From: Phallusia mammillata
Lineage: Eukaryota
Reading direction: 5' to 3'
NCBI GenBank assembly: GCA_965637545.1
Contig: OZ281495.1
Coordinates: forward strand, 20,708,001-20,772,000
DNA: 64,000 bases
In this document: positions 28,092-52,110 of the stretch, piece after piece
How positions within the stretch are numbered: position 1 is the stretch's first letter
Layout of the letters: each line of letters opens with the position of its first letter
Program-made: the position numbers and the translations under genes
The notes under the pieces: generated by a model
The model's database searches: none
Told to the model about the DNA's origin: nothing
The model's input: the letters and a program-made list of their open reading frames with translations, nothing else

Positions 28092-29723
28092 ATCTGGCAA
28101 CCCTGCTCTTTATCCATATTGAGGTTTGTCACGATTACAGTTTGTTGTTTACTCTATTTGACATGTTTAAAGCCGAAATTAATACCGAACTTCAACACGA
28201 GTTTGCCATTTATATTTTTTTGCAGGAGGGTCACAGATCTTATACACTGTTATTCAAAGGGGCCATGAGGCCAAAAATATACTTTAAGGGGGCCACGGTC
28301 CATGAAAGGTTGAGAACCACTGTGCTAGTTTGTTGTCTCTGTTTTCTGTATTTTACCAATGCTTTTGGTGCTTTATAAGAACTTTATGTTTCGAGATATG
28401 TCATTATCCTGATGAAGGCATTTTGTACGTGACGTCGAAGCGTCGGTTGTTTACATTTAAACTGCTTGAAGAGCAATACTTGTTTGTATACATTATGGTA
28501 ATTAGCATCAGCTTATTTACTTAATCTGTGTGATGGCAACAGTACAGCGCGGCTATATAGCACAATACACGTGTTGGACAGCTCACTAAAGACTAGTCCA
28601 ATAATTTAATTAAAGCACATATTGGCTTACTCGCACCACTGTACATAAAATGTTTTTGTTGCTGTTCTGCGTATACCGTAAAAGTTTTTTCCGTATTCAA
28701 GCTAATAAAAAACTTCCCTTCTGCCAACTCTGGTGAAAGTGTGTATAGCAGTGGTTCTCAAACTTTTATAATGTCGGTGCCAAATGGCAGTTTTTAAAGC
28801 TAAAATAGCAATCTTTAGTGGTTTGCTGAGGTCTGTTGCGACTTGTGAGCCGCAAAATAAGTTGTTGGGAGCCTCATGCGGCCCTGAGAGCCGCGTTTTG
28901 GTTTTTATTCCGCTGATTTTATCAAAGTTAAACTGCCTGTAACTAACATATATGCTACCTGAAATATTCAGTAGAATAAAAAGACATTCATAAAAATTTG
29001 AGGGGCGACATACATTTTACTGACATCGTAAATTAGAAACCGAAAGGAAACTCGCTGCGTGGCACAAGTGACGTGATTTTAGAGTGCGTGAAAAAGTTTG
29101 CTGGTTTCTATTGCGATCCGATATCAGCCTATAACATTTTCTACATGGAGCGCTTACAGATTACGCAGTTTGAAACTCTGAAATTAGGTACAATACAGGG
29201 TCAGTTAACGGTGTTTGTCAGTGAAATGCGTTGTTCAAATGGCTCTAATTTTTGTTACACTTCTAATTGCCACATGGAGTTTAACCAATGTAAATGCATG
29301 GAGTTTTTTTCATTTCGTTTTGACTTTCAGTCTTGTGACGTAATAAAAATTTACCGTTGCTGCTCAAACACGAACGTCTGTTTTAACGTATGTCTTTAAA
29401 AATGATTTCTTAGTTTATGAAAAAAAGTCCACAACATTACAGTTTCAATAAACGTTAAATTCATTGCTTTTGTTACTAAAGTCACAACAGGAATTTTAAG
29501 ACTGTCATCTTACCAGAGACATTTAACTTTCGACTATTAATGACGACGAAATTCAACTCACGAATACAGTAGCTTTTTGAATAACAAAAAATGACAAGCA
29601 GCACTCATGGTTCCAATGCTGTTGTCGCATTTCGTGGATAAAGACATATGTACTTGAACATGCTTACACGCCACTCGGTTTTTAAGATTGGTCTTTTCAA
29701 TGTAAGTAAGATTCACAGAGTTG

Positions 29724-41254: not shown

Positions 41255-42550
41255 TCAATCGCACAAATAAGACAACCAAAGAGCCACGGCGTCTGATATT
41301 AGATTAGGATTGGCATGAATATCCTTTTGTGGATGCACTGTTGTTAATCCCCACGTATCAATAAATGTCAAATATTTTAGGTCTGACAGCATACCGAGCA
41401 TTATTTGATTAAATCGGTACAAATGCCATTCTGTTGGACGAAACGGACTGGGCACCGTGTATCTTATTCCTAAGCGAACGAAAACTTTGACGTTATGGTT
41501 TCGTCGCTTCAAACGATGCAGGGCATCTTTAATGATGGCCGAAAGACGTTCTACAAAAATCAAAGGGTCGTAATAATCAAAATGGGCACCGATATGAAAC
41601 ACCACAACAACATTGCCTTGTTCAGTTATATTGTCTAAAGTTTTCACAATGTACGGTTTGACACGGGGTGGTCCCGGGTTTTGCAAAGGAAGTCCGTGTG
41701 CTCTGTACTTGATTGTGATGTTTCTCAGTCGATTTTTCCCGTTTCGTGGTTGTGACCAAAGATCACTTCTGTCTGCATCATCTGTCAATTTAAGTTTTTC
41801 GAATAATATCATGTACCACTGGCGCATTGTAGAGTCCCCGATGATGTAAATCTGCTTATTAGGGAGGCACTTATCAGCAAGGGTCAAATCACGATGCGTG
41901 TTTTTGCATTCCAATGAATTCCACTTTTCATTGCGATAAAATCCACTGGGTACCAACAATTCATTTACTTGCTTTCGGTTGATCGTCTTACATTGTTGCA
42001 AGTTTTGAGCAAATGACGTTTTGTTTACCTCAGTTTTGAGCAAAACTTTATTTTTGATCGCAATTTCTCTGTTGAGTTTTGTGTTAAACAGCTCCTTGCA
42101 CTCTGGGTGTTGCAGTTTTGCCTCAGTTCTTTGGTACCATTGCATTTCTTTGGGGCATGTTTCGTTAGTCGGGCGATAGCAAAACCATGTTGTTCCAAAC
42201 GATTGGTTTGAAAAATCACAGAGCAGTTTATCATTTTCCCTAACAAAAAAAACAAGTAAATATTAGTTGTCAAAATCAAAATGCAATATCTGACTTACAT
42301 TAGTTTTACGTCGCACTCTTCCTTGGTACCAGACGGATACGTTCCAATACACAACAAGGGGTCTATTGTACTTGCTTGCATGATCAGGTCGATGACAGCT
42401 TCACTGGAATGTACAAGCTCCACTTCTAATTTGCTTAAACCGGGCCATGTTATCACGGTTCGCCAAGTATATCTTCCATTTCCATGATCGTGAATGGATA
42501 CAGGCACTCCGTCGCCCGTTTTTAATCCTTGCGAATTCAAACAAGCAAGT
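41255..42550 (-). pseudogene. NXPE-family copy 3 (duplicate of copy 2), exon 1 missing
   Basis: Matches 31696-32991 at offset 9559. Upstream lie a palindromic MITE and the 3' end of the YR gene. Confidence 0.8.
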
Positions 42551-42985: not shown

Positions 42986-45900
42986 TTAAACAAGGCCAAA
43001 GTCTATTACAAACATTTGTGTAATTTTGTTTACTGCATGTATCTACTTTTTACAAATCTACATGACAATGACAAAGACTAATCTTGATATACCTTGTAAT
43101 TTCTTTCTTGGTGTGGCAGGTAAGGAAGAACTAGAGTTTCTGCGTGTTCTTTTGACTGGAGATTCTGAAACAAATAACAAACCGTTGATTTTTAAGTATA
43201 CTAGACTATTGAACGTTGGGTATAATTTTGAATCTGTTTGTGTTGTTTGTCCATTTTTACAGTGCAAAACATGTTGGTTAGAACTGGTTCATGTTTTATT
43301 TTTAAAAAACCCTCAGAACAGATATTTTTTATATGTAATATATAAGAGTGACAAACAGAAATATTATTTGTGAAAAATGTAATCTTTTATTAAAATAATG
43401 GTTGTTTATAAAGTTCGTCAATTCGAAATTGCAGCGTTAAGAACTTGTGATCAAAACACAACAAATTTTAGTGAAAAATTTCAACCTTGGAATTATAATG
43501 TCAAGCTGTAATATACCTAGTAATTTCTTGCTTGGTGTTGCAGCTGAAGCAGAATCTGAGTTTCTGCGTACTCGCTTGTTTGGAGATACTGGAACAAACA
43601 ACAGTTTTATTAAGTATGTTTCAGACACAAATAGACACCAGGTTTTCTCTATACAATTTACCTTCATAAGGGTTGACAACTTTTGCCTCATAAAAAAGGT
43701 GGTTCTGTGGCCATCTAGCATAAACAATGTCTCCAGGTTTAAGGTCATTGAGTGCTTTTACTTTTTTCCGATTTGACATTTTTATGTCCTTGGGGTGATA
43801 AATATAACATGTTAAATTGTCATCAACAAAGTCAACTTTGATGAATTCACGTTCTGCAAAGCATTGAAAAAAAGATACATCTTCAGTATTTTGTACTAAA
43901 ATGTTTAGTTTTAAAAGTAGAAACTGGTTGAATTTGACGATAGACTTACTTCTTATCATGCTACTAGCAGCAGACCATAAGCTATGAAAATCACAAATAA
44001 AACAAATCAAAAAATTACCCACCCATTTGTACTTGAGTGGTGTTGATAGATTCCGGTTCAACTTCGACGTCTACACCACCTGATGATTTATCAGTCACAG
44101 CACCATGTTTTCTTTGGCTGCTGGTCTCAGAACCTGAATAACATGTACATCTAAACCACATGTTACTAAATCACAATTAAAAAAAAAATTACCCACCCAT
44201 TTGTACTCGAGTGGTGTTGATAGATTCCGGTTCAACTTCGACGTCTACACCACCTGATGATTTATCAGTCACAGCACCATGTTTTCTTTGGCTGCTGGTC
44301 TCAGAACCTGAATAACATGTACATGAAAACCACATATTACTTACCTTGTCAAATCCCCCAATACCTTTTGGTCCACTTAATGTAGTTGCAATGTTCTGGG
44401 TAGCCTCTATTCAACAAAATACACAAGGTGATTACTGGAAAGGTTATTGCAACATTTGACTACTTTTTAACAGTGCACATAGTTACCATTTACCAAGTTC
44501 TAACGAATGCGCTTTTCTGTTTGTGTGACAAAATTATATGCAAAATTTGCCACAAAACATAACAGTCACAATGCTGGGAAGCATGTTGTCTACCACACCA
44601 AAAAAAGAAACAAGACTTTCTAAAACCAGTCCAAAATTTTGTTTCAAGACACACAAGACATAACCACCTGATGCTAATCCACCCAATACAATCCGTGCTG
44701 ATTCCACTATTTTCGCTGGGTTGGTAATGTCGTAAAATTTATCCTGAACTTCAACTGAATGGCCTTCAGCCCTTGCCACAGCTCTTTGTATATCTCTCGG
44801 TTTGTCACTAATTTCCCTAGCTATCAGTTTCCTAGTTTCAGTAACTGTGACCGGTCTTTCAAAGCATCTTGCAGTTACTTCCTTGTATATGTGGTTAAAT
44901 TGAGAGGGTGTCATTTTTACTCCAACTTTATTTCCAAAAAATGATGGAAACATCCTTTCTTCAATATTCACCCCCAACTTTTGCAAATATGTCCAGATAG
45001 TTGCAAAGCATCATCGTATTCGGATTTTGAAAATACAATACAACCATGCCGCCTCTTCTCTTTCTGTTCACTGACTAAAACTGAAAAGTATCCACCAGAT
45101 GTAATTTCTCGATTTTTGAATTCAGTTTTCAGCATACCAGTGAGAAGAGATGATCTGCACCCTTGGTGACAGATCAGTCTGGCAAACAAATCACCAGAGA
45201 GTAATTTTAGTTCAGCACATGAAAGTGAACCAGTTTTTTTCTGTCGCATGGCCTCCATCTTTTTAGCATTTTTCTGTGTGTATTCAAGAATCACTTTTCC
45301 AGGAAAGCTGCATCCCGAAAGTAATCTCCTTGATTTATCCTTCATAAACACTTCTCTTTTTTCTTTTTTCGTTCTCTGTCGTTGCATCCATTCTTTCACA
45401 TACTTTTTCAGTCTTTCAATTTTATATTCCTCATAAACATTCTCAAATTGCAAGTGCAAAAATTGCAGAAAGTTGTTAATAGTTGCCAAATAGGCATACA
45501 ATGTTGATGCACTTCCATCTTTACAAACTTTTTTGGATAAATTTGAATATATAGTTTTTGGATACTTGAAGTCGTCTAAACATGTGATCACAGATTTTAT
45601 TTGATTTACATATGTTTGTGCCTGGGTAGTTGTTGTTTTATTCCGGTTTCCACTTCCCATAGTTACCAAAGCATTTTGATATGTATCCAATATGTCATTT
45701 AGGACATAACTGATTTTACTTCTATTTATGATATCGTTGAACGTTTTGGAGCCTTTTTGTATCTCTTTGTGTTTGTGAGCAATGTGGCTTTTTATGCCCA
45801 AAACTATTAACTTGCAAATACAGCATTGGTAGCCAGAAAAGTTTTTGTAACTACCCAACCTTCTGCGTTTCGCAAAACTATCATAATAAAAATCTTCCTT

Positions 45901-48900
45901 TGGAATATCCATATGTTTTTTTCCTATGGTGCGTCACATTTGTGTATGTTTCATGGCAGAATGGACATACTCTTCTTTTTCTGGATGAACCAGACCTAAA
46001 AGTGAAAATATGTATGTTGCACTAACCATTTACTTTCTTTAATACTAAAGTGATATTTGTAACACATCTAAAAGCACACAAAGTACAAGATTGGTTCAAA
46101 ACAATAAATATTAACCCTACAGAAGAAAGCTGGAGGTTGGAAGAGGGCAATTGCTAATATGCACTTAAAAAAAAGTTACTTTGTTTTTAAAATTTTAAAA
46201 TAAGTCCACAAAAACATAGTTAAACATTTCACAACTTACTTTTGGGTTGATGGCGATCGACTTGCAGGGGTTGAGACTCTGCTTTGCACAGCTCTGCGAC
46301 TGTATGACTTTTTCCTTTTAAAAAAGTAAAATTATTATTAATTTAGTTATTGTTTGTCATTAGTTAGGTTTATCTAAACAGTATTACCTATGGGTTGATG
46401 GTGATCGACTTGCAGAGGTTGAGACTCTGCTATGCACAGCTCTGCCGCTGTAGTGTGACTTTTTCCTTTAAAAAAAGTAAAATTATTATTAACTTAGTTA
46501 TTGTTTGTCATTAGTTAGGTTTATCTAAACAGTATTACCTATGGGTTGATGGTGATCGACTTGCAGAGGTTGAGACTCTGCTATGCACAGCTCTGCCGCT
46601 GTAGTGTGACTTTTTCCTTTAAAAAAAGTAAAATTATTATTAACTTAGTTATTGTTTGTCATTAGTTAGGTTTATCTAAACAGTATTACCTATGGGTTGA
46701 TGGTGATCGACTTGCAGAGGTTGAGACTCTGCTATGCACAGCTCTGCCGCTGTAGTGTGACTTTTTCCTTTAAAAAAAGTAAAATTATTATTAACTTAGT
46801 TATTGTTTGTCATTAGTTAGGTTTATCTAAACAGTATTACCTATGGGTTGATGGTGATCGACTTGCAGAGGTTGAGACTCTGCTATGCACAGCTCTGCCG
46901 CTGTAGTGTGACTTTTTCCTTTAAAAAAAGTAAAATTATTATTAACTTAGTTATTGTTTGTCATTAGTTAGGTTTATCTAAACAGTATTACCTATGGGTT
47001 GATGGTGATCGACTTGCAGAGGTTGAGACTCTGCTATGCACAGCTCTGCCGCTGTAGTGTGACTTTTTCCATTTAAAAAAGTAAAATTATTATTAATTTA
47101 GCTATTCTTTGTCATTAGTTAGGTTTATCTAAACCAGTGGTTCTCAAAGTATGGGTCGCGACCCAAACATGGGTCGCGCAGGGTCCAAAAATGGGTCGTG
47201 CTATGTGTGATTCAGTTCTGCCCAAACAAACTATTACTGCATTCAGTAAACACAAACGAATTTACTTAATGCAGAAATAAAGTCGCCTCACTCTAATAAG
47301 TTGTACAGTAAAATGAACCAATTATTACAACATACAGACAATAGCTTTCTAATTTTATTGTTACGCACATGGCGATTGTAACGTCATAGCACGGGAAATA
47401 ATAGGACAAGTTAATCTTGCATAACTGAACGGGAGATGTAACAGTTAGTGTTAAAGGATGTGTAAGTATTCCTACAAGTAAACATTTTTAGATTTGGGAT
47501 TCACTTCTATCAGTGATCATGGCGCTGCAAACCCACAATGTGTGTTATGCAATTGTCGAACGAATCGGCTTCGACCTCATTAGGCCTGCCGCCAATTTGA
47601 CATGCTGGGCAGACTCCTATGCGGCGGCGAAAATTGCAGTCCGTCTCGTTAATACATTTTTTGATGTTTGAGGCTTGGGTCGTGAGATGTTCATAAAACC
47701 CAGATTTGGGTCGCGGTTAAAAAAGTTTGAGAACCACTGATCTAAACAGTATTACCTATGGGTTGATGGTGATCGACTTGCAGAGGTTGAGACTCTGCTA
47801 TGCACAGCTCTGCCGCTGTAGTGTGACTTTTTCCTTTTAAAAAAGTAAAATTATTATTAATTTAGCTATTCTTTGTCATTAGTTAGGTTTATCTAAACAG
47901 TATTACCTATGGGTTGATGGTGATCGACTTGCAGAGGTTGAGACTCTGCTATGCACAGCTCTGCCGCTGTAGTGTGACTTTTTCCTTTTAAAAAAGTAAA
48001 ATTATTATTAATTTAGTTATTCTTTGTCATTAGTTAGGTTTATCTAAACAGTATTACCTATGGGTTGATGGTGATCGACTTGCAGAGGTTGAGACTCTGC
48101 TATGCACAGCTCTGCCGCTGTAGTGTGACTTTTTCCTTTTAAAAAATCAAAATTATTATTAATTTAGTTGTTGTTTGTCATTAGTTAGTTATTTCTTAAC
48201 AGTATTACCGGTAAGTTGATGGCGATCGACTTGCAGAGGTTGAGACTCTGCTTTGCACAGCTCTGCGACTGCAGTGTGACTTTTTTCTTTAAAAAAATTA
48301 AAATTGTTATTAATTTAGTTATTGTTTGTCATTAGTTTATTATTTCTGTACAGTATTACCTAAGATGGGTTGATGGCGATCGATTTGCAGAGGTTGAGAC
48401 TCTGCTTTGCACAGCTCTGCGACTGTAGTGTGACTTTTTTCTTTTAAAAATTTAAAATTGTTATTAATTTAGTTATTGTTTGTCATTAGTTGATTATTTC
48501 TAAACAGTATTACCTACGATGGGTTGATGGTGATCGACTTGCAGAGGTTGAGACTCTGCTTTGCATAGCTCTGCCGCTGTAGTGTGACTTTTTCCTTTTA
48601 AAAAATCAAAATTATTATTAATTTAGTTGTTGTTTGTCATTAGTTAGTTATTTCTAAACAGTATTACCTAAGACTGGTTGATGGCGATCGACTTGCAGAG
48701 GTTGAGACTCTGCCTTGCACAGCTCTGCGGCTGTAGTGTGACTTTTTGCTTAAAAAAATCAAAATTATTATGAATTTAATTGTTGTTTGTCATTAGTTAG
48801 TTATTTCTTAACAGTATTACCAGTAAGAGGATGGCGATCGACTTGCAGAGGTTGAGACTCTGCGGCTGTAGTGTGACTTTTTTCTTTTAAAAAAGTAAAA

Positions 48901-50111
48901 TTGTTATTAATTTAGTTATTGTTTTTCATTAGTTAGTTATTTCTTAACAGTATTACCTAAGACGGGTTGATGGCAATCAACTTGCAGAGGTTGAGACTCT
49001 GCTTAGCACAGCTCTGCGGCTGTAGTGTGACTTTTTTCTTTTAAAAAAATTAAAATTGTTATTAATTTAGTTATTGTTTGTCATTAGTTTATTATTTCTG
49101 TACAGTATTACCTATGGGTTGATGGCGATCGACTTGCAGAGGTTGAGACTCTGCTTTGCACAGCTCTGCGGCTGTAGTGTGACTTTTTGCTTCAAAAAAT
49201 CAAAATTATTATTAATTTAGTTATTGTTTGTCATTAGTTAGTTATTTCTAAACAGTATTACCTAAGACTGGTTGATGGCGATCGACTTGCAGAGGTTGAG
49301 ACTCTGCCTTGCACAGCTCTGCGGCTGTAGTGTGACTTTTTGCTTAAAAAAATCAAAATTATTATGAATTTAATTGTTGTTTGTCATTAGTTAGTTATTT
49401 CTTAACAGTATTACCTAAGATGGGTTGATGGCGATCGACTTGCAGAGGTTGAGACTCTGCTTTGCACAGCTCTGTGGCTGTAGTGTGACTTTTTGCTTCA
49501 AAAAATCAAAATTGTTATATATTAATTTAGTTGTTGTTTGTCATTAGTTAGTGATTTCTTAACAGTATTACCTAAGATGGGTTGATGGCGATCGACTTGC
49601 AGAGGTTGAGACTCTGCTTTGCACAGCTCTGCCGCTGTAGTGTGACTTTTTCCTTTTTTGCAAATGAGAAGGATGTTTGTCCGAAGAGATTGGTTTGACA
49701 CCACTTATCCCTTCGCAATCCTTCTGTGATCTTTTTCATTGAAGTGCAAATGTTGGAAACAAACAAAACAAAACTAATGATGTTGAATCCATTAAAATTA
49801 AATTATAATGAATGCATTTGTGATTATCTTTTAATAACACTAGTTGTCAAAAATATCTAACATGCCTTACCCCAAGCATGAATCATTTTCAGAGGAATCA
49901 AAGTTAATGCATCGTTTGCTTTGACTGAATCTACAAAACACATTAACTGATATATAAAACAGTAATATCGTGCAAAGAGCAAAACAAAGTTGGACGCCAT
50001 ATTGTTTGTTGGTCATGCTGTAAGGCATATGACTACATGTTTAATGTGGCTTTAATTGAATTCTTTTCTGTAAAATTCTTACCCAGAAGCCAAATCTTCA
50101 TTCGCTTCCAT
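42986..50111 (-). CDS. Multi-exon gene: Ser/Arg-rich exon-repeat array + 2 C2H2-like zinc fingers + tyrosine recombinase + Tudor-like domain; frameshifted, possibly a dead Crypton-like or unclassified YR element
   Basis: The model starts ATG 50111 (exons 50111-50083, 49930-49871, 49730-49572), passes through 18 further repeat exons, then 45995-44665 (ZnF+YR), a small exon near 44345-44406, 44307-44197, 44133-44023, 43853-43662 (Tudor), 43588-43517, 43164-43093, and a tentative last exon 43032-42986. Two frameshifts: an A7 run at 45916-45922, and about 45000. Confidence 0.7.
43662..43853 (-). CDS. Tudor-like exon of the YR gene
   Basis: FIKVDFVDDNLTCYIYHPKDIK...LKPGDIVYARWPQNHLFYEAKVV resembles the Tudor consensus (G-D-x-V-x-A-R-W...F-Y-x-A-x-V). 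Phase 1-1 exon with ttgcag/gtaaat splice sites. Confidence 0.65.
44665..45995 (-). CDS. Zinc-finger + tyrosine recombinase exon (two frameshifts)
   Basis: CPFCHETYTNVTHH..H and CCICKLIVLGIKSHIAHKH zinc fingers. YR catalytic pattern: R in ICHQGCRSS (45154-45156), K in VSEQK, TETRK in place of HxxR, GHS, and Tyr in QDKFYD (44732-44734). Confidence 0.75.
46240..49730 (-). repeat. Tandem array of 19 exon+intron units (~151 bp)
   Basis: Each unit is an exon of 63, 75, 78 or 81 nt plus an intron of 72-76 nt (gtaata...ctaac/ctaat...ttttaaag), except the MITE-bearing intron. Phase 2-2 translation is RKKSHYSGRAV(H/Q)SRVSTSASRSPSTH. Confidence 0.9.
47135..47739 (+). mobile_element. hAT MITE (family B) inserted in an intron of the exon array
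   Basis: TIRs cagtggttctcaaa / tttgagaaccactg; TSD atctaaac; homologous to 55427-55907 in the opposite orientation. Confidence 0.92.
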
Positions 50112-50736
50112 ATTACCAAAATAAGCACAAATAAGACAATGATATAAAATCAGTAATGAATAACACTAAAAATTCCTATTTCAAAAGCAGACAGTTTGCA
50201 TACACTGATGGTTGCACACAAGTATCTATTGAATAAAATAAAACATTTCAAGCTATTTACAATTTTACAAAACAAACGATGTGACTTTGTCTGTACTTGC
50301 GATGACTTTAATCAGAGAATAAAGTGCTTTTGGATTTGCTGAAGCAAACCTTTATAATACCTCTACTAAGCTTTACAGAAATGTGCAACTATTTTAAAAT
50401 AACCTACTAAATGGGGCACTTTCTTATTTGACTATAAACGCACCAAAGACAAAGAACCGTTCTTTGTTCTGAACTTGTCTTCATCAACAACATACAACAC
50501 ATTTTTTACAGTACAGTATAATCCTTTACCGCCACCTTGTGTTAGTATTCAAAAAAATAGGTTTTATGTTTATTTTATAGAAAAGCCCGTAAAAAACATG
50601 TATACACAAACAGACAAGTATATCAACCACTGCAAAAATTTTATATTTTTCTCGAAACAAATTTTCTTGAAACATATTTTTCTTGAAACGTTTTTAGTTT
50701 TTTTCGCGCCGAAAATTTGTTTCCTGCCGTGTAGGG

Positions 50737-52053
50737 GGGCGACGGAGTGCCAGTGTCGATTTACGATCATGGAAATGGAAGATATACTTGGCGAACCGTG
50801 ATACCATGGCCCGGTTTAAGCAAATTAGAAGTGGAGCTTGTACATTCCAGTGAAGCTGTCATGGACCTGATCATGCAAGCAAGTACAATAAACCCCTTGT
50901 TGTTTATTGGAACGTATCCGTCTGGTACCAAGGAAGAGTGCGACATGAACTAATGTAAGTCTGATGTACACCGTTCACTTTAATTGTTAAAAATACTAAA
51001 AATCGATTGTTATCTTGGAAAGGCCAAATGTTGCTTTTATGTTTGACGAGTAAAAATCAATTGATTTTTTAGTAACAAAGATAAAATGCTCTGTGACTTT
51101 TCAAACAAGACGCTTGGAACGACATGGTTTTGCTATCGCTCGAACAACCAAACATGTCCGAAAGAAATGCTTTGGTACCAGAGAACTGAGGAAAAATTAG
51201 AACACAATGAGCGCAATGAGCTGTTTGACACAACTCTGAACAGAGAAATTGTCATACCAAATCAAGTTCGACTCAAAACCGAGTTCAGCAAAGGATTTTA
51301 CACTCAAAGTTTGCAACAACATGAGACGGTTTACCCAAAGCAAATAAAACTTCTGTCGCTTCCTAGTGGTTTTTATCTCAACGGAAAATGGAATTCTTTT
51401 CAAATCAAAAACACGCATCGTGACTTAACCCGTGCTGATAAGTGCCTGGCTAACAAACGTATTTACCTCATCGGGGACTCGACGATGCGTCAGTGGTACC
51501 TAATATTATTCGAAAAACTCCAATTGACTGATGACGTAGACGGAAGTGATCTTTGGTCACAACCACGAAATGGTAACAATCGAATGAAAAACATCACAAT
51601 AAATTACAGAGCACACGGACTTCCTTTGCAAAACCCGGGACCTCCTCGTGTCAAACCTTACATTGTAAACACTTTGGACGAAATAACTGAACAAGGCAAT
51701 GTTGTTGTGGTGTTTCATATCGGTGCACATTTTGATTATTACGACCCTTCAATTTTTATTAAACGTCTTTCGGCCATTAAAATTGCCCTAAATCGATTAA
51801 AGCGACGAAACCATGACGTCAAAGTTTTCGTTCGCTTAGGAATAAGATACACGGTGCCCAGTCCGTTTCGTCCAACAGAATGGTATTTGTACCGATTTAA
51901 TCAAATAATTCTCGGTATGCTGTCAGACATGAAGTATTTGACATTTATTGATACGTGGGGATTAACAAAGTGCATCCACAAAAGGATATTCATGCCAAGC
52001 CTGATCTTTTATCGGACGCTGTCGCTCTTTGGTTGTCTTATCTCTGCAATTAA
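50737..52053 (+). pseudogene. NXPE-family copy 4 (5'-truncated, frameshifted)
   Basis: Begins abruptly inside exon 2 (gggcgacggagtg). There is a 1-bp deletion at the end of exon 2 and another just before KDIH. Exon 3 starts at 51073 and the original-frame stop is at 52051-52053. Confidence 0.85.
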
Positions 52054-52110
52054 CTTTGTGCCTTGTTTAGGGAAGGGCTTTTATTTATACTGTTTTTTGA
52101 TGTCTTAAAC

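What the first reader, a model, noticed from the sequence alone, without database searches (positions are those of the whole stretch)
46240..49730. Apparent 151-bp satellite is an array of 19 exon+intron units under reading-frame constraint
Seen in sequence: each unit has a gt donor, a ctaac/ctaat branch-like motif and an ag acceptor. Exon lengths change only in multiples of 3 (63, 75, 78, 81) while introns vary by single bases (72-76). Only the phase-2 frame (RKKSHYSGRAVQSRVSTSASRSPSTH) joins both the upstream ATG exons and the downstream zinc-finger exon (…PSTQK|SGSSRKRRVCPFC). Inference: symmetric exons allow copy-number change and exon skipping without frameshift, giving a tunable basic, phosphorylatable disordered tail of roughly 500 aa. 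Units at the 46388-48135 end are homogeneous and those toward 49572 are more diverged, consistent with ongoing unequal crossover.
Basis: partly seen in the sequence, partly recalled or inferred. Interest (0 to 1): 0.8.

Follow-up and report, generated by a model that had tools for sequence, protein, structure and literature searches.

The report
Spliced exon-plus-intron tandem repeat array
The apparent 151-bp satellite is a real run of 19 small exon-plus-intron units that RNA data show being spliced into the front end of a sea-squirt-type zinc-finger/recombinase-like gene, a young example of a known way that genes grow repetitive protein tails.

Summary
On the minus strand, 46240-49730 is an array of 19 exon-like segments (159, then 81/78/63/75 nt, all multiples of 3). 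They are separated by 72-76-nt GT..AG introns. RNA-like contigs from three studies, but not a DNA run, carry the predicted joints. These are last unit to zinc-finger exon (intron 45996-46239), a 78-nt cyclic contig of identical spliced exons, and joins between diverged units.

The array frame runs into a zinc-finger exon and a tyrosine-recombinase-fold core. Homologues occur in ascidians. One has the same N-terminal repeats as single ~72-nt exons separated by long, dissimilar introns, plus its own 293-bp exon+intron array.

- Unit 4 has an in-frame TGA.
- Unit 13 has TG instead of the AG acceptor.
- One intron carries a 605-bp hAT-like MITE.
- The window allele has two frameshifts downstream (T7 run, 10 nt missing) that the RNA contigs lack.

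Exon and intron halves are equally diverged, and there is no third-codon-position excess. So only frame and splice signals look constrained, not the peptide.

This is a young exon-intron "overlapping megasatellite", a new member of a known kind. Tunability by copy number or exon skipping is hinted at, not shown. The scan also noted this gene in another first-stage note (s1-361511).

The parts
46240..49730 (-). Array of 19 exon-like segments (E0-E18) and 18 short introns; 151-bp basic unit = 78-81-nt exon + 72-76-nt intron
   Evidence: TRF; unit parsing; RNA joints
49572..49730 (-). E0: first array exon (159 nt), unique 5' part fused to one repeat unit; predicted acceptor AG at 49732-49731
   Evidence: frame; X1 depth in bin 49624-49822 and joint 49572>49342. 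The acceptor itself is not shown by a listed joint
48957..49037 (-). E4: 81-nt unit with in-frame TGA (two CpG>TpG changes at 48979 and 48975) and TAA in the other open frame
   Evidence: An E4-like exon is present in RNA-like contigs of X1 and X13 with 2 other letters, spliced to a following exon. Whether those contigs carry the stop is unresolved
46992..47069 (-). E13: 78-nt unit whose acceptor dinucleotide (47071-47070) reads TG instead of AG; probably skipped or cryptically spliced in this allele
   Evidence: intron alignment, I12 ends AAATG
47135..47739 (.). 605-bp hAT-like MITE inserted in intron 12; 8-bp target duplication (47127-47134 and 47740-47747), terminal inverted repeats CAGTGGTTCTCAAA
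   Evidence: very high depth in DNA run X11
46388..48135 (-). Homogeneous block: E10-E17 exons identical; four consecutive 151-bp units at 46388-46991 identical
45996..46239 (-). Intron between last array exon (E18, 46314-46240) and the zinc-finger exon
   Evidence: Joint 'skips 244, CT..AC (cut +2)' in X1, X5, X13 and absent from DNA run X11
44668..45995 (-). Large exon: two CxxC...H zinc fingers plus tyrosine-recombinase-fold core; broken in the window by a T7 run (45916-45922; T6 in RNA contigs) and by 10 nt missing near 44983-44993
   Evidence: Contigs of 1434-1524 nt in X1, X5, X13; frame check; homologues; fold
50083..50111 (-). Predicted first coding exon (ATG, 29 nt, ends in phase 2, GTAAGA donor)
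   Evidence: Inference from sequence. It parallels the 35-nt phase-2 first exon annotated in homologue L001. Only a trace of RNA depth falls in its bin
49871..49930 (-). Predicted optional 60-nt phase-2 exon between the ATG exon and E0
   Evidence: Inference from sequence; no RNA contig depth in X1, X5, X13
44009..44341 (-). 174-bp duplication (1.9 copies, 97%) that also looks like an exon+intron unit, between the recombinase core and the Tudor-like part
   Evidence: TRF; translation; position matches the internal repeats of P0003 and P0004
43660..43860 (-). Tudor-like C-terminal exon
   Evidence: tblastn to P0004, P0003, P0006; Pfam SGF29_Tudor E 3.6e-4, below cut-off

Best explanation
The 151-bp 'satellite' is the N-terminal coding region of a minus-strand gene. 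Each unit is one phase-2 symmetric exon (78-81 nt, about 26 codons, consensus R-KKSHYS-x-RAVQSRVSTSASRSPSTH) plus one minimal intron of about 73 nt.

The array arose, and is still being homogenised, by unequal crossing-over or gene conversion of whole exon+intron units. This is inferred from eight identical exons, four identical 151-bp units and an identical 153-bp block in the diverged half.

The spliceosome removes the short introns (shown by RNA contigs). The exons are concatenated into a tail of up to about 520 aa. The tail is strongly basic and Ser/Arg/Lys/His-rich (S 30%, R 15%, D+E 0.6%, pI 12) and presumably disordered. It is fused to two zinc fingers, a tyrosine-recombinase-fold core, a second repeat region and a Tudor-like domain.

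Selection acts on exon length modulo 3 and on splice signals, not detectably on the amino-acid sequence. That is what one expects for a low-complexity, composition-defined tail. An RS-like role in nuclear, chromatin or nucleic-acid binding, or as a phospho-regulated region, is inferred and not shown.

The allele in the window is itself defective (TGA in unit 4, lost acceptor of unit 13, T7 frameshift, 10 nt missing). Intact versions of the large exon are expressed in other samples.
For: - Anatomy.
- Splicing: the GT..AG joint 46239/45996 is in three RNA-like runs of three studies and absent from DNA run X11. A cyclic 108-nt contig 'goes back 78'. There are joints 49572>49342 and 49415>49189. 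Contig pieces end at predicted exon edges.
- Frame: array frame A is continuous with CPFC...HH. With the RNA-contig variants (T6, +10 nt) the 1337-nt exon is one open 445-codon frame.
- Homology: an exhaustive search gives 27 relatives. P0004 (49% identity) has an N-terminal K/R/S/H-rich repeat region followed directly by the CPYC zinc finger and 'PDIPKENLLYDS'.
- In the P0004 locus L001 each N-terminal repeat is one 63-81-nt exon with phase-2 borders, separated by 0.3-2.4-kb introns.
- L001 also has a 293-bp x5 array of two exons and two introns per unit, annotated as coding.
- Fold: an AlphaFold model (pLDDT 73) has 49 tyrosine recombinases (XerA, Cre, XerH, Flp, integrases) and one type IB topoisomerase among its top 50 Foldseek PDB matches.
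- Indel contrast: exon indels are all 3n, intron indels none.
Against: - One unit has an in-frame stop and one lacks AG.
- Exon and intron halves are equally diverged and there is no third-position excess. So peptide-level selection is not detectable, and most 3n lengths are inherited from one or two founder units rather than independently maintained.
- The ATG exon and the E0 acceptor are predictions without a listed RNA joint.
- The RNA runs are only guessed to be RNA by the tool, although the intron-less joints absent from DNA argue for it.
- All read evidence is from assembled contigs. No single molecule spanning the array was seen.
- Several frame-breaking alleles exist (window: T7, -10 nt; X11: T7; X1: -5 nt), which suggests weak constraint on the gene in this species.
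Confidence: 0.8

Rival explanations
1. The array is transcribed and spliced but is no longer under coding selection in this species. The gene, or at least this allele, is a decaying recombinase-derived gene or pseudogene. The 3n exon lengths are a legacy of the founder unit.
For: - TGA in E4 and TG acceptor at E13.
- T7 frameshift in the window and in DNA run X11; 10 nt missing in the window; a further 5-nt deletion in X1 transcripts.
- Equal exon and intron divergence and an 8:7:7 codon-position spread.
- E4-specific words are absent from most other DNA runs.
Against: - X5- and X13-type transcripts keep a 445-codon open frame through the large exon, in frame with the array.
- All four or five independent exon indels are 3n while intron indels are not.
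- The same architecture, an N-terminal repeat tail encoded by symmetric exons, is kept in a 49%-identical homologue.
- The gene is expressed in three studies.
Confidence: 0.17
2. The array is a non-coding minisatellite lying inside one large intron or a UTR. The GT/AG motifs are chance features copied with the unit.
For: All units are copies, so motif recurrence alone proves nothing. Two of three frames are open by chance of composition.
Against: RNA-like contigs join exon halves precisely at the predicted GT..AG borders at several units and join the last unit to the zinc-finger exon. The DNA run lacks these joints.
Confidence: 0.02

Closest known systems
Exon-intron 'overlapping megasatellites' (OVERMEGA) and their aged multi-exon form, as described for vertebrates (bioRxiv 10.1101/2021.07.19.452908, read)
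   Same: It is a tandem repeat of at least 90 nt and at least 3 copies whose motif spans exon-intron junctions inside a gene. The proposed life cycle is: an exon-intron segment is amplified, then the intron parts diverge until only the exons repeat. That cycle is mirrored here by the window (young, introns still about 90-100% alike) versus homologue L001 (one repeat per exon, long dissimilar introns).
   Different: The unit here is far more compact (151 bp, 73-nt introns). There are 19 units, 8 of them with identical exons. The host is an ascidian-type recombinase-derived gene rather than a vertebrate gene. A transposon has landed in one intron.
Classical tandem exon amplification by unequal crossing-over (LPA kringle IV-2, NBPF/Olduvai, titin PEVK and nebulin exons, spider Flag silk gene). 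Recalled from general knowledge, not tested here
   Same: Symmetric exons are amplified together with their introns, giving length-variable repetitive protein regions. Introns are homogenised along with exons.
   Different: Those units are hundreds to thousands of bp or encode folded domains. Here the unit encodes a 26-aa low-complexity basic Ser-rich peptide with a near-minimal intron.
RS/SR-like low-complexity domains of splicing and chromatin proteins
   Same: The composition is similar (S 30%, R 15%, SR/RS/SP motifs, almost no acidic residues). It suggests a phosphorylatable disordered basic tail.
   Different: There is no RRM and there are no long RS dipeptide runs. The function is untested, so this is a resemblance only.
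Crypton-type tyrosine recombinases and their domesticated DUF3504 derivatives, including tunicate representatives (PMC3212892)
   Same: The gene attached to the array has a tyrosine-recombinase fold and occurs in ascidians (P0003 from Ciona intestinalis).
   Different: There is no Pfam hit to Phage_integrase or DUF3504 and no sequence hit to solved recombinases. The zinc fingers, Tudor-like domain and repeat arrays are not part of described Cryptons. No terminal structures or multiple copies were examined.

Membership tests
Exon-intron tandem array (overlapping megasatellite) | Contiguous direct repeat, motif at least 90 nt, at least 3 copies | tested here: met
   TRF: period 151, 22.6 copies at 46236-49656; 19 parsed units
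Exon-intron tandem array (overlapping megasatellite) | Motif spans exon-intron junctions of an expressed gene (units are spliced) | tested here: met
   Joints at predicted GT..AG borders in RNA-like contigs of 3 studies and absent from the DNA run; a cyclic 78-nt spliced unitig
Exon-intron tandem array (overlapping megasatellite) | Exons symmetric, so that unit gain or loss keeps the frame | tested here: met
   All 19 exon lengths are multiples of 3 with the same phase-2 borders
Protein-coding repeat under purifying selection on the peptide | Exon halves less diverged than intron halves; excess of third-position or synonymous change | tested here: not met
   Variable columns 28% vs 30%; pairwise identity 92% vs 90%; variable sites 8:7:7 by codon position; one in-frame stop
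Tyrosine recombinase superfamily (for the gene carrying the array) | Two-domain Cre/Xer-like fold | tested here: met
   AF2 model of homologue core (pLDDT 73, pTM 0.60). Of the top 50 Foldseek PDB matches, 49 are tyrosine recombinases and one is a type IB topoisomerase. Probability is about 1.0 for the top matches, E 1e-4 to 4e-2, TM 0.3-0.4
Tyrosine recombinase superfamily (for the gene carrying the array) | Significant sequence match to Phage_integrase, DUF3504 or solved recombinases | tested here: not met
   No Pfam hit above cut-off, only weak Phage_int_SAM_4 at E 0.0075 in P0004; PDB profile search found no recombinase
Tyrosine recombinase superfamily (for the gene carrying the array) | Catalytic R-H-R-Y residues | tested here: inconclusive
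   By eye in the alignment consensus: GCR...E, T-x-x-R-K, and GH-x(7-8)-Y are conserved, and the first His position reads T or D. No structure-based residue mapping was done
Tudor domain (C-terminal part of the gene) | Pfam Tudor-type match above gathering score | tested here: inconclusive
   SGF29_Tudor 21 bits vs cut-off 23.8; LBR_tudor 20 vs 22
SR/RS-domain proteins | RS dipeptide-rich domain together with RRM(s) | tested here: not met
   The composition is Ser/Arg-rich, but no RRM or other splicing-factor domain appeared in any Pfam scan

The most novel reading that the evidence does not exclude
The gene family has a standing propensity to build and turn over exon+intron arrays at two positions. 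Position one is the N-terminal tail: 151 bp x19 here, versus aged one-exon-per-repeat in L001. Position two is the linker before the Tudor domain: 174 bp x2 here, 293 bp x5 in L001, and an in-exon 27-bp x23 array in Ciona. On this reading, tail length is a rapidly evolving, individually variable and splice-adjustable property of a domesticated recombinase. The T7 (two DNA sources) versus T6 (three RNA sources) difference at 45916-45922 could then reflect allele-specific decay of frameshifted transcripts or, less likely, an RNA-level correction.
Probability: 0.2. Interest if true: 0.6.

Novelty: new member of a known kind. Interest (0 to 1): 0.45.

Why it matters
It is an unusually clean and compact snapshot of how repetitive protein tails are born. 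A minimal exon+intron module is caught while still being amplified and homogenised, there is RNA evidence that the copies are spliced, and a homologue shows the aged state.

It also warns annotators that a 'satellite' flagged by repeat masking can be coding. In addition, this reference allele carries several frame-breaking differences from expressed alleles.

For the poorly known ascidian zinc-finger/recombinase-fold/Tudor family, it shows that the variable parts are built from exon-intron arrays. It does not reveal a new mechanism.

Tried and rejected
- The word-index protein search with the 314-aa ORF found nothing. The exhaustive search was then needed.
- Pfam on the window ORFs gave no recombinase or zinc-finger family, only NXPE for the flanking genes and a sub-threshold Tudor.
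- A profile search of PDB sequences gave no recombinase. Only the fold search did.
- A findings search by words returned nothing.
- I tried to decide from k-mer holdings whether the RNA contigs of unit 4 carry the TGA. The 81-nt query had only 3 sampled words (RNA-like runs 1 of 3, X11 2 of 3), which is inconclusive.
- Table 3 lists exactly 40 rows and does not include the two 'other letters' of the E4-like contigs, so it appears to be truncated. Their positions are therefore unknown.
- I considered and rejected a plus-strand reading: all plus frames are closed, and the GT..AG borders are on the minus strand.
- I rejected the second open frame (KSHTTAAELC...): it stops 14 codons into the zinc-finger exon and has a stop 20 codons upstream of the array.
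- I rejected the ATG at 49738 as start: it is in the third frame, which stops at every unit end.
- The array unit does not occur elsewhere in the window.
Full report
**What is in the sequence**

Tandem Repeats Finder reports a 151-bp array at 46236-49656 (22.6 copies, 78% matches). The array reads as a gene on the minus strand.

It consists of 19 exon-like segments. E0 (49730-49572, 159 nt) fuses unique 5' sequence to one repeat unit. E1-E18 measure 81 nt (six units), 78 nt (ten), 63 nt (E5) and 75 nt (E18). Every length is a multiple of three.

Each exon is followed by GT: GTAATAC eighteen times, GTAAGT after E18. The intron halves measure 72, 73, 74 or 76 nt. They keep invariant GTAATACTGT and CTAATGA motifs and a T-run before the acceptor.

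The array unit occurs nowhere else in the window.

The exons of E10-E17 are identical, and four whole 151-bp units (46388-46991) are identical. E0-E9 are about 91% alike. They contain an identical 153-bp block at 49414-49262 and 48820-48668.

- (i) E4 (49037-48957) has an in-frame TGA created by two CpG>TpG changes. It also has a TAA in the only other open frame.
- (ii) The acceptor in front of E13 (exon 47069-46992) reads TG instead of AG.
- (iii) The intron in front of E13 carries a 605-bp hAT-like MITE (47135-47739). It has an 8-bp target duplication and CAGTGGTTCTCAAA inverted ends.
- (iv) Two of the three frames are open through the units. Only the flanking exons choose between them.

**Is it spliced?**

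I laid contigs of three RNA-like runs from three studies (X1, X5, X13) and of one DNA run (X11) on 44450-50400.

- All three RNA-like runs have a contig of 1.4-1.5 kb. It covers 44668-45993 and then skips 244 nt with CT..AC ends (GT..AG on the minus strand) to 46238-46298. So the last array exon is joined to the zinc-finger exon across intron 45996-46239. The DNA run has no such joint.
- X5 has a 108-nt contig that 'goes back 78' at 46464/46387. This is what a cyclic de Bruijn path of identical spliced 78-nt exons gives (78 + 30).
- X1 joins 49572 to 49342 (CT..AC ends). An X5 contig joins 49415 to 49189.
- An E4-like exon (48957-49035) is followed in X13 by the start of the next exon.
- The listed pieces of RNA contigs end within 0-5 nt of the predicted exon borders.
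- The tool only guesses that these runs are RNA. But intron-less joints that are absent from the DNA run are hard to explain otherwise.
- No single record spans the array. So the number of exons per transcript is unknown.
- The two joins between non-adjacent units may be exon skipping or allelic array differences.

**Reading frame and the gene**

The frame giving R-KKSHYS-x-RAVQSRVSTSASRSPSTH runs from E0 through E18 into ...STQK|SGSSRKRRVCPFCHETYTNVTHH.

A predicted 29-nt ATG exon (50111-50083) and an optional 60-nt exon (49930-49871) have the same phase-2 borders. They open the frame. These two exons are inference.

In the window the frame breaks after the first zinc finger at a T7 run (45916-45922). 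It breaks again near 44983-44993. All three RNA-like runs have T6, and all four runs have 10 extra nt there.

With those observed variants the whole 1337-nt exon is one open frame of 445 codons, in frame with the array. X1 transcripts carry a further 5-nt deletion. DNA run X11 has T7 like the window. The reference allele is therefore defective, and frame-breaking alleles seem to segregate.

**Relatives**

The word search was blank. An exhaustive phmmer search of 1.84 billion representatives gave only 27 hits.

P0004 (840 aa, 49% identity, NCBI assembly GCA_961645235.1) and P0003 (812 aa) share the architecture. P0003 is from assembly GCA_018327825, which PMC12865960 names as Ciona intestinalis type B. 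P0004 has the full architecture:
- an N-terminal K/R/S/H-rich repeat region;
- the CPxC zinc finger running straight into 'DIPKEN/DF-YDS';
- a conserved core;
- a second repeat region;
- a Tudor-like domain;
- a basic C-terminus.

P0003 shares the part from the zinc finger onward; its annotated N-terminus has no repeat region.

An AlphaFold model of the core (pLDDT 73) has 49 tyrosine recombinases (XerA, Cre, XerH, Flp, integrases) and one type IB topoisomerase among its 50 best Foldseek PDB matches. Pfam and PDB sequence searches do not reach them.

In the P0004 locus (L001) each N-terminal repeat is one 63-81-nt exon with the same phase. There the introns are 0.3-2.4 kb and unrelated to one another. 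L001 also contains a 293-bp x5 array (95% identical) in which each unit holds two exons and two introns of the central repeat region.

The window has a 174-bp x1.9 exon+intron duplication at the equivalent place (44009-44341). Ciona has an in-exon 27-bp x23 repeat there.

**Constraint**

Exon and intron halves are equally variable: 28% vs 30% variable columns, and mean pairwise identity 92% vs 90%. Variable exon sites fall 8:7:7 on codon positions 1:2:3. Most substitutions are non-synonymous. Peptide-level purifying selection is therefore not detectable.

Two things do differ between the halves.
- Indel length: exon indels are -3, -3, -15, -3 (all 3n), while intron indels are +-1 and +4. This gives Fisher p = 0.03 with minimal event counts and 0.008 with more liberal ones.
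- Conservation of splice signals.

Because the units are recent copies, most 3n lengths are inherited, not independently maintained. 'Reading-frame constraint' is supported only in this weak sense.

**Mechanism**

Shown:
- exon+intron modules;
- splicing;
- frame continuity into a zinc-finger/recombinase-fold protein;
- the same exon-per-repeat logic in a homologue.

Inferred:
- amplification and homogenisation by unequal crossing-over or conversion of whole units;
- a disordered, very basic Ser/Arg/Lys/His tail (up to about 520 aa; S 30%, R 15%, D+E 0.6%, pI 12) acting as an RS-like, phosphorylatable nucleic-acid, chromatin or localisation region;
- length change by unit gain, unit loss or exon skipping without frameshift.

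**Comparison with what is known**

This is the 'OVERMEGA' type of megasatellite, with the life cycle proposed in bioRxiv 10.1101/2021.07.19.452908. An exon-intron segment is amplified, and the intron parts then diverge until only the exons repeat. The window shows the young state and L001 the aged one.

Classical cases such as LPA KIV-2, NBPF, titin PEVK and spider Flag (from general knowledge) work the same way with larger units.

Crypton-derived genes, including tunicate ones, are described in PMC3212892. Membership of that family is not established here.

**Verdict**

The feature is real and expressed, and it is a tidy example. It is a new member of a known kind rather than a new mechanism. 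The interest is moderate. It lies in the compactness and youth of the array, its recurrence at two positions in a barely described gene family, and the unexplained DNA/RNA difference at the T-run.

Another first-stage note of this scan (s1-361511) had already flagged the gene as an intron-rich tyrosine-recombinase gene with an N-terminal repeat array. My fold and Pfam tests partly back that.

Noticed in passing
window 45916-45922: The T7 run breaks the frame after the first zinc finger in the window and in DNA run X11. Contigs of three RNA-like runs from three studies all have T6, which keeps the frame. This could be an allelic difference with decay of frameshifted mRNA, or an RNA-DNA difference. 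It is not resolvable without DNA and RNA of one individual.
   Followed up: partly
window 44983-44993 and 45032: All four runs, including DNA run X11, have 10 extra nt relative to the window. The extra nt join ORF 44968-45912 to ORF 44534-44986. X1 transcripts also lack 5 nt at 45032, which breaks the frame again.
   Followed up: partly
window 47135-47739 (other ends at 28749, 38308, 55427, 55894, 58832): A 605-bp hAT-like MITE with an 8-bp target duplication sits inside one array intron. The family is extremely abundant in DNA run X11 (word depth above 250,000) and is present in RNA contigs. Further terminal-repeat matches occur elsewhere in the window.
   Followed up: partly
window 44009-44341: A 174-bp duplication (97% identical) looks like a second exon+intron unit of the same gene. 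It lies at the position where homologues have their central repeats.
   Followed up: partly
window 41255-42145 (-) and 51086-52108 (+): Two paralogous NXPE-family ORFs (Pfam NXPE4_C, E 1e-49 and 1e-43) flank the recombinase-like gene in inverted orientation.
   Followed up: no
L001 12180-13690 and L001 1-1684: The homologue locus has a 293-bp x5 array with two exons and two introns per unit, annotated as coding. It also has an unrelated 204-bp satellite (8 copies) upstream of the gene.
   Followed up: partly
L002 4451-5181: The Ciona intestinalis homologue has 21-bp and 27-bp in-exon tandem repeats (23 copies) at the linker before the Tudor-like domain. Its annotated N-terminus starts inside the first zinc finger, so upstream exons may be missing from the annotation.
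   Followed up: no
window 46409-49617 (within each exon): A 22-nt core in the middle of the exon half (GCAGAGTCTCAACCTCTGCAAG on the minus strand) is identical in 17 of 19 units. It is much more uniform than the exon ends and could be an exonic splicing signal, or it could be chance.
   Followed up: no
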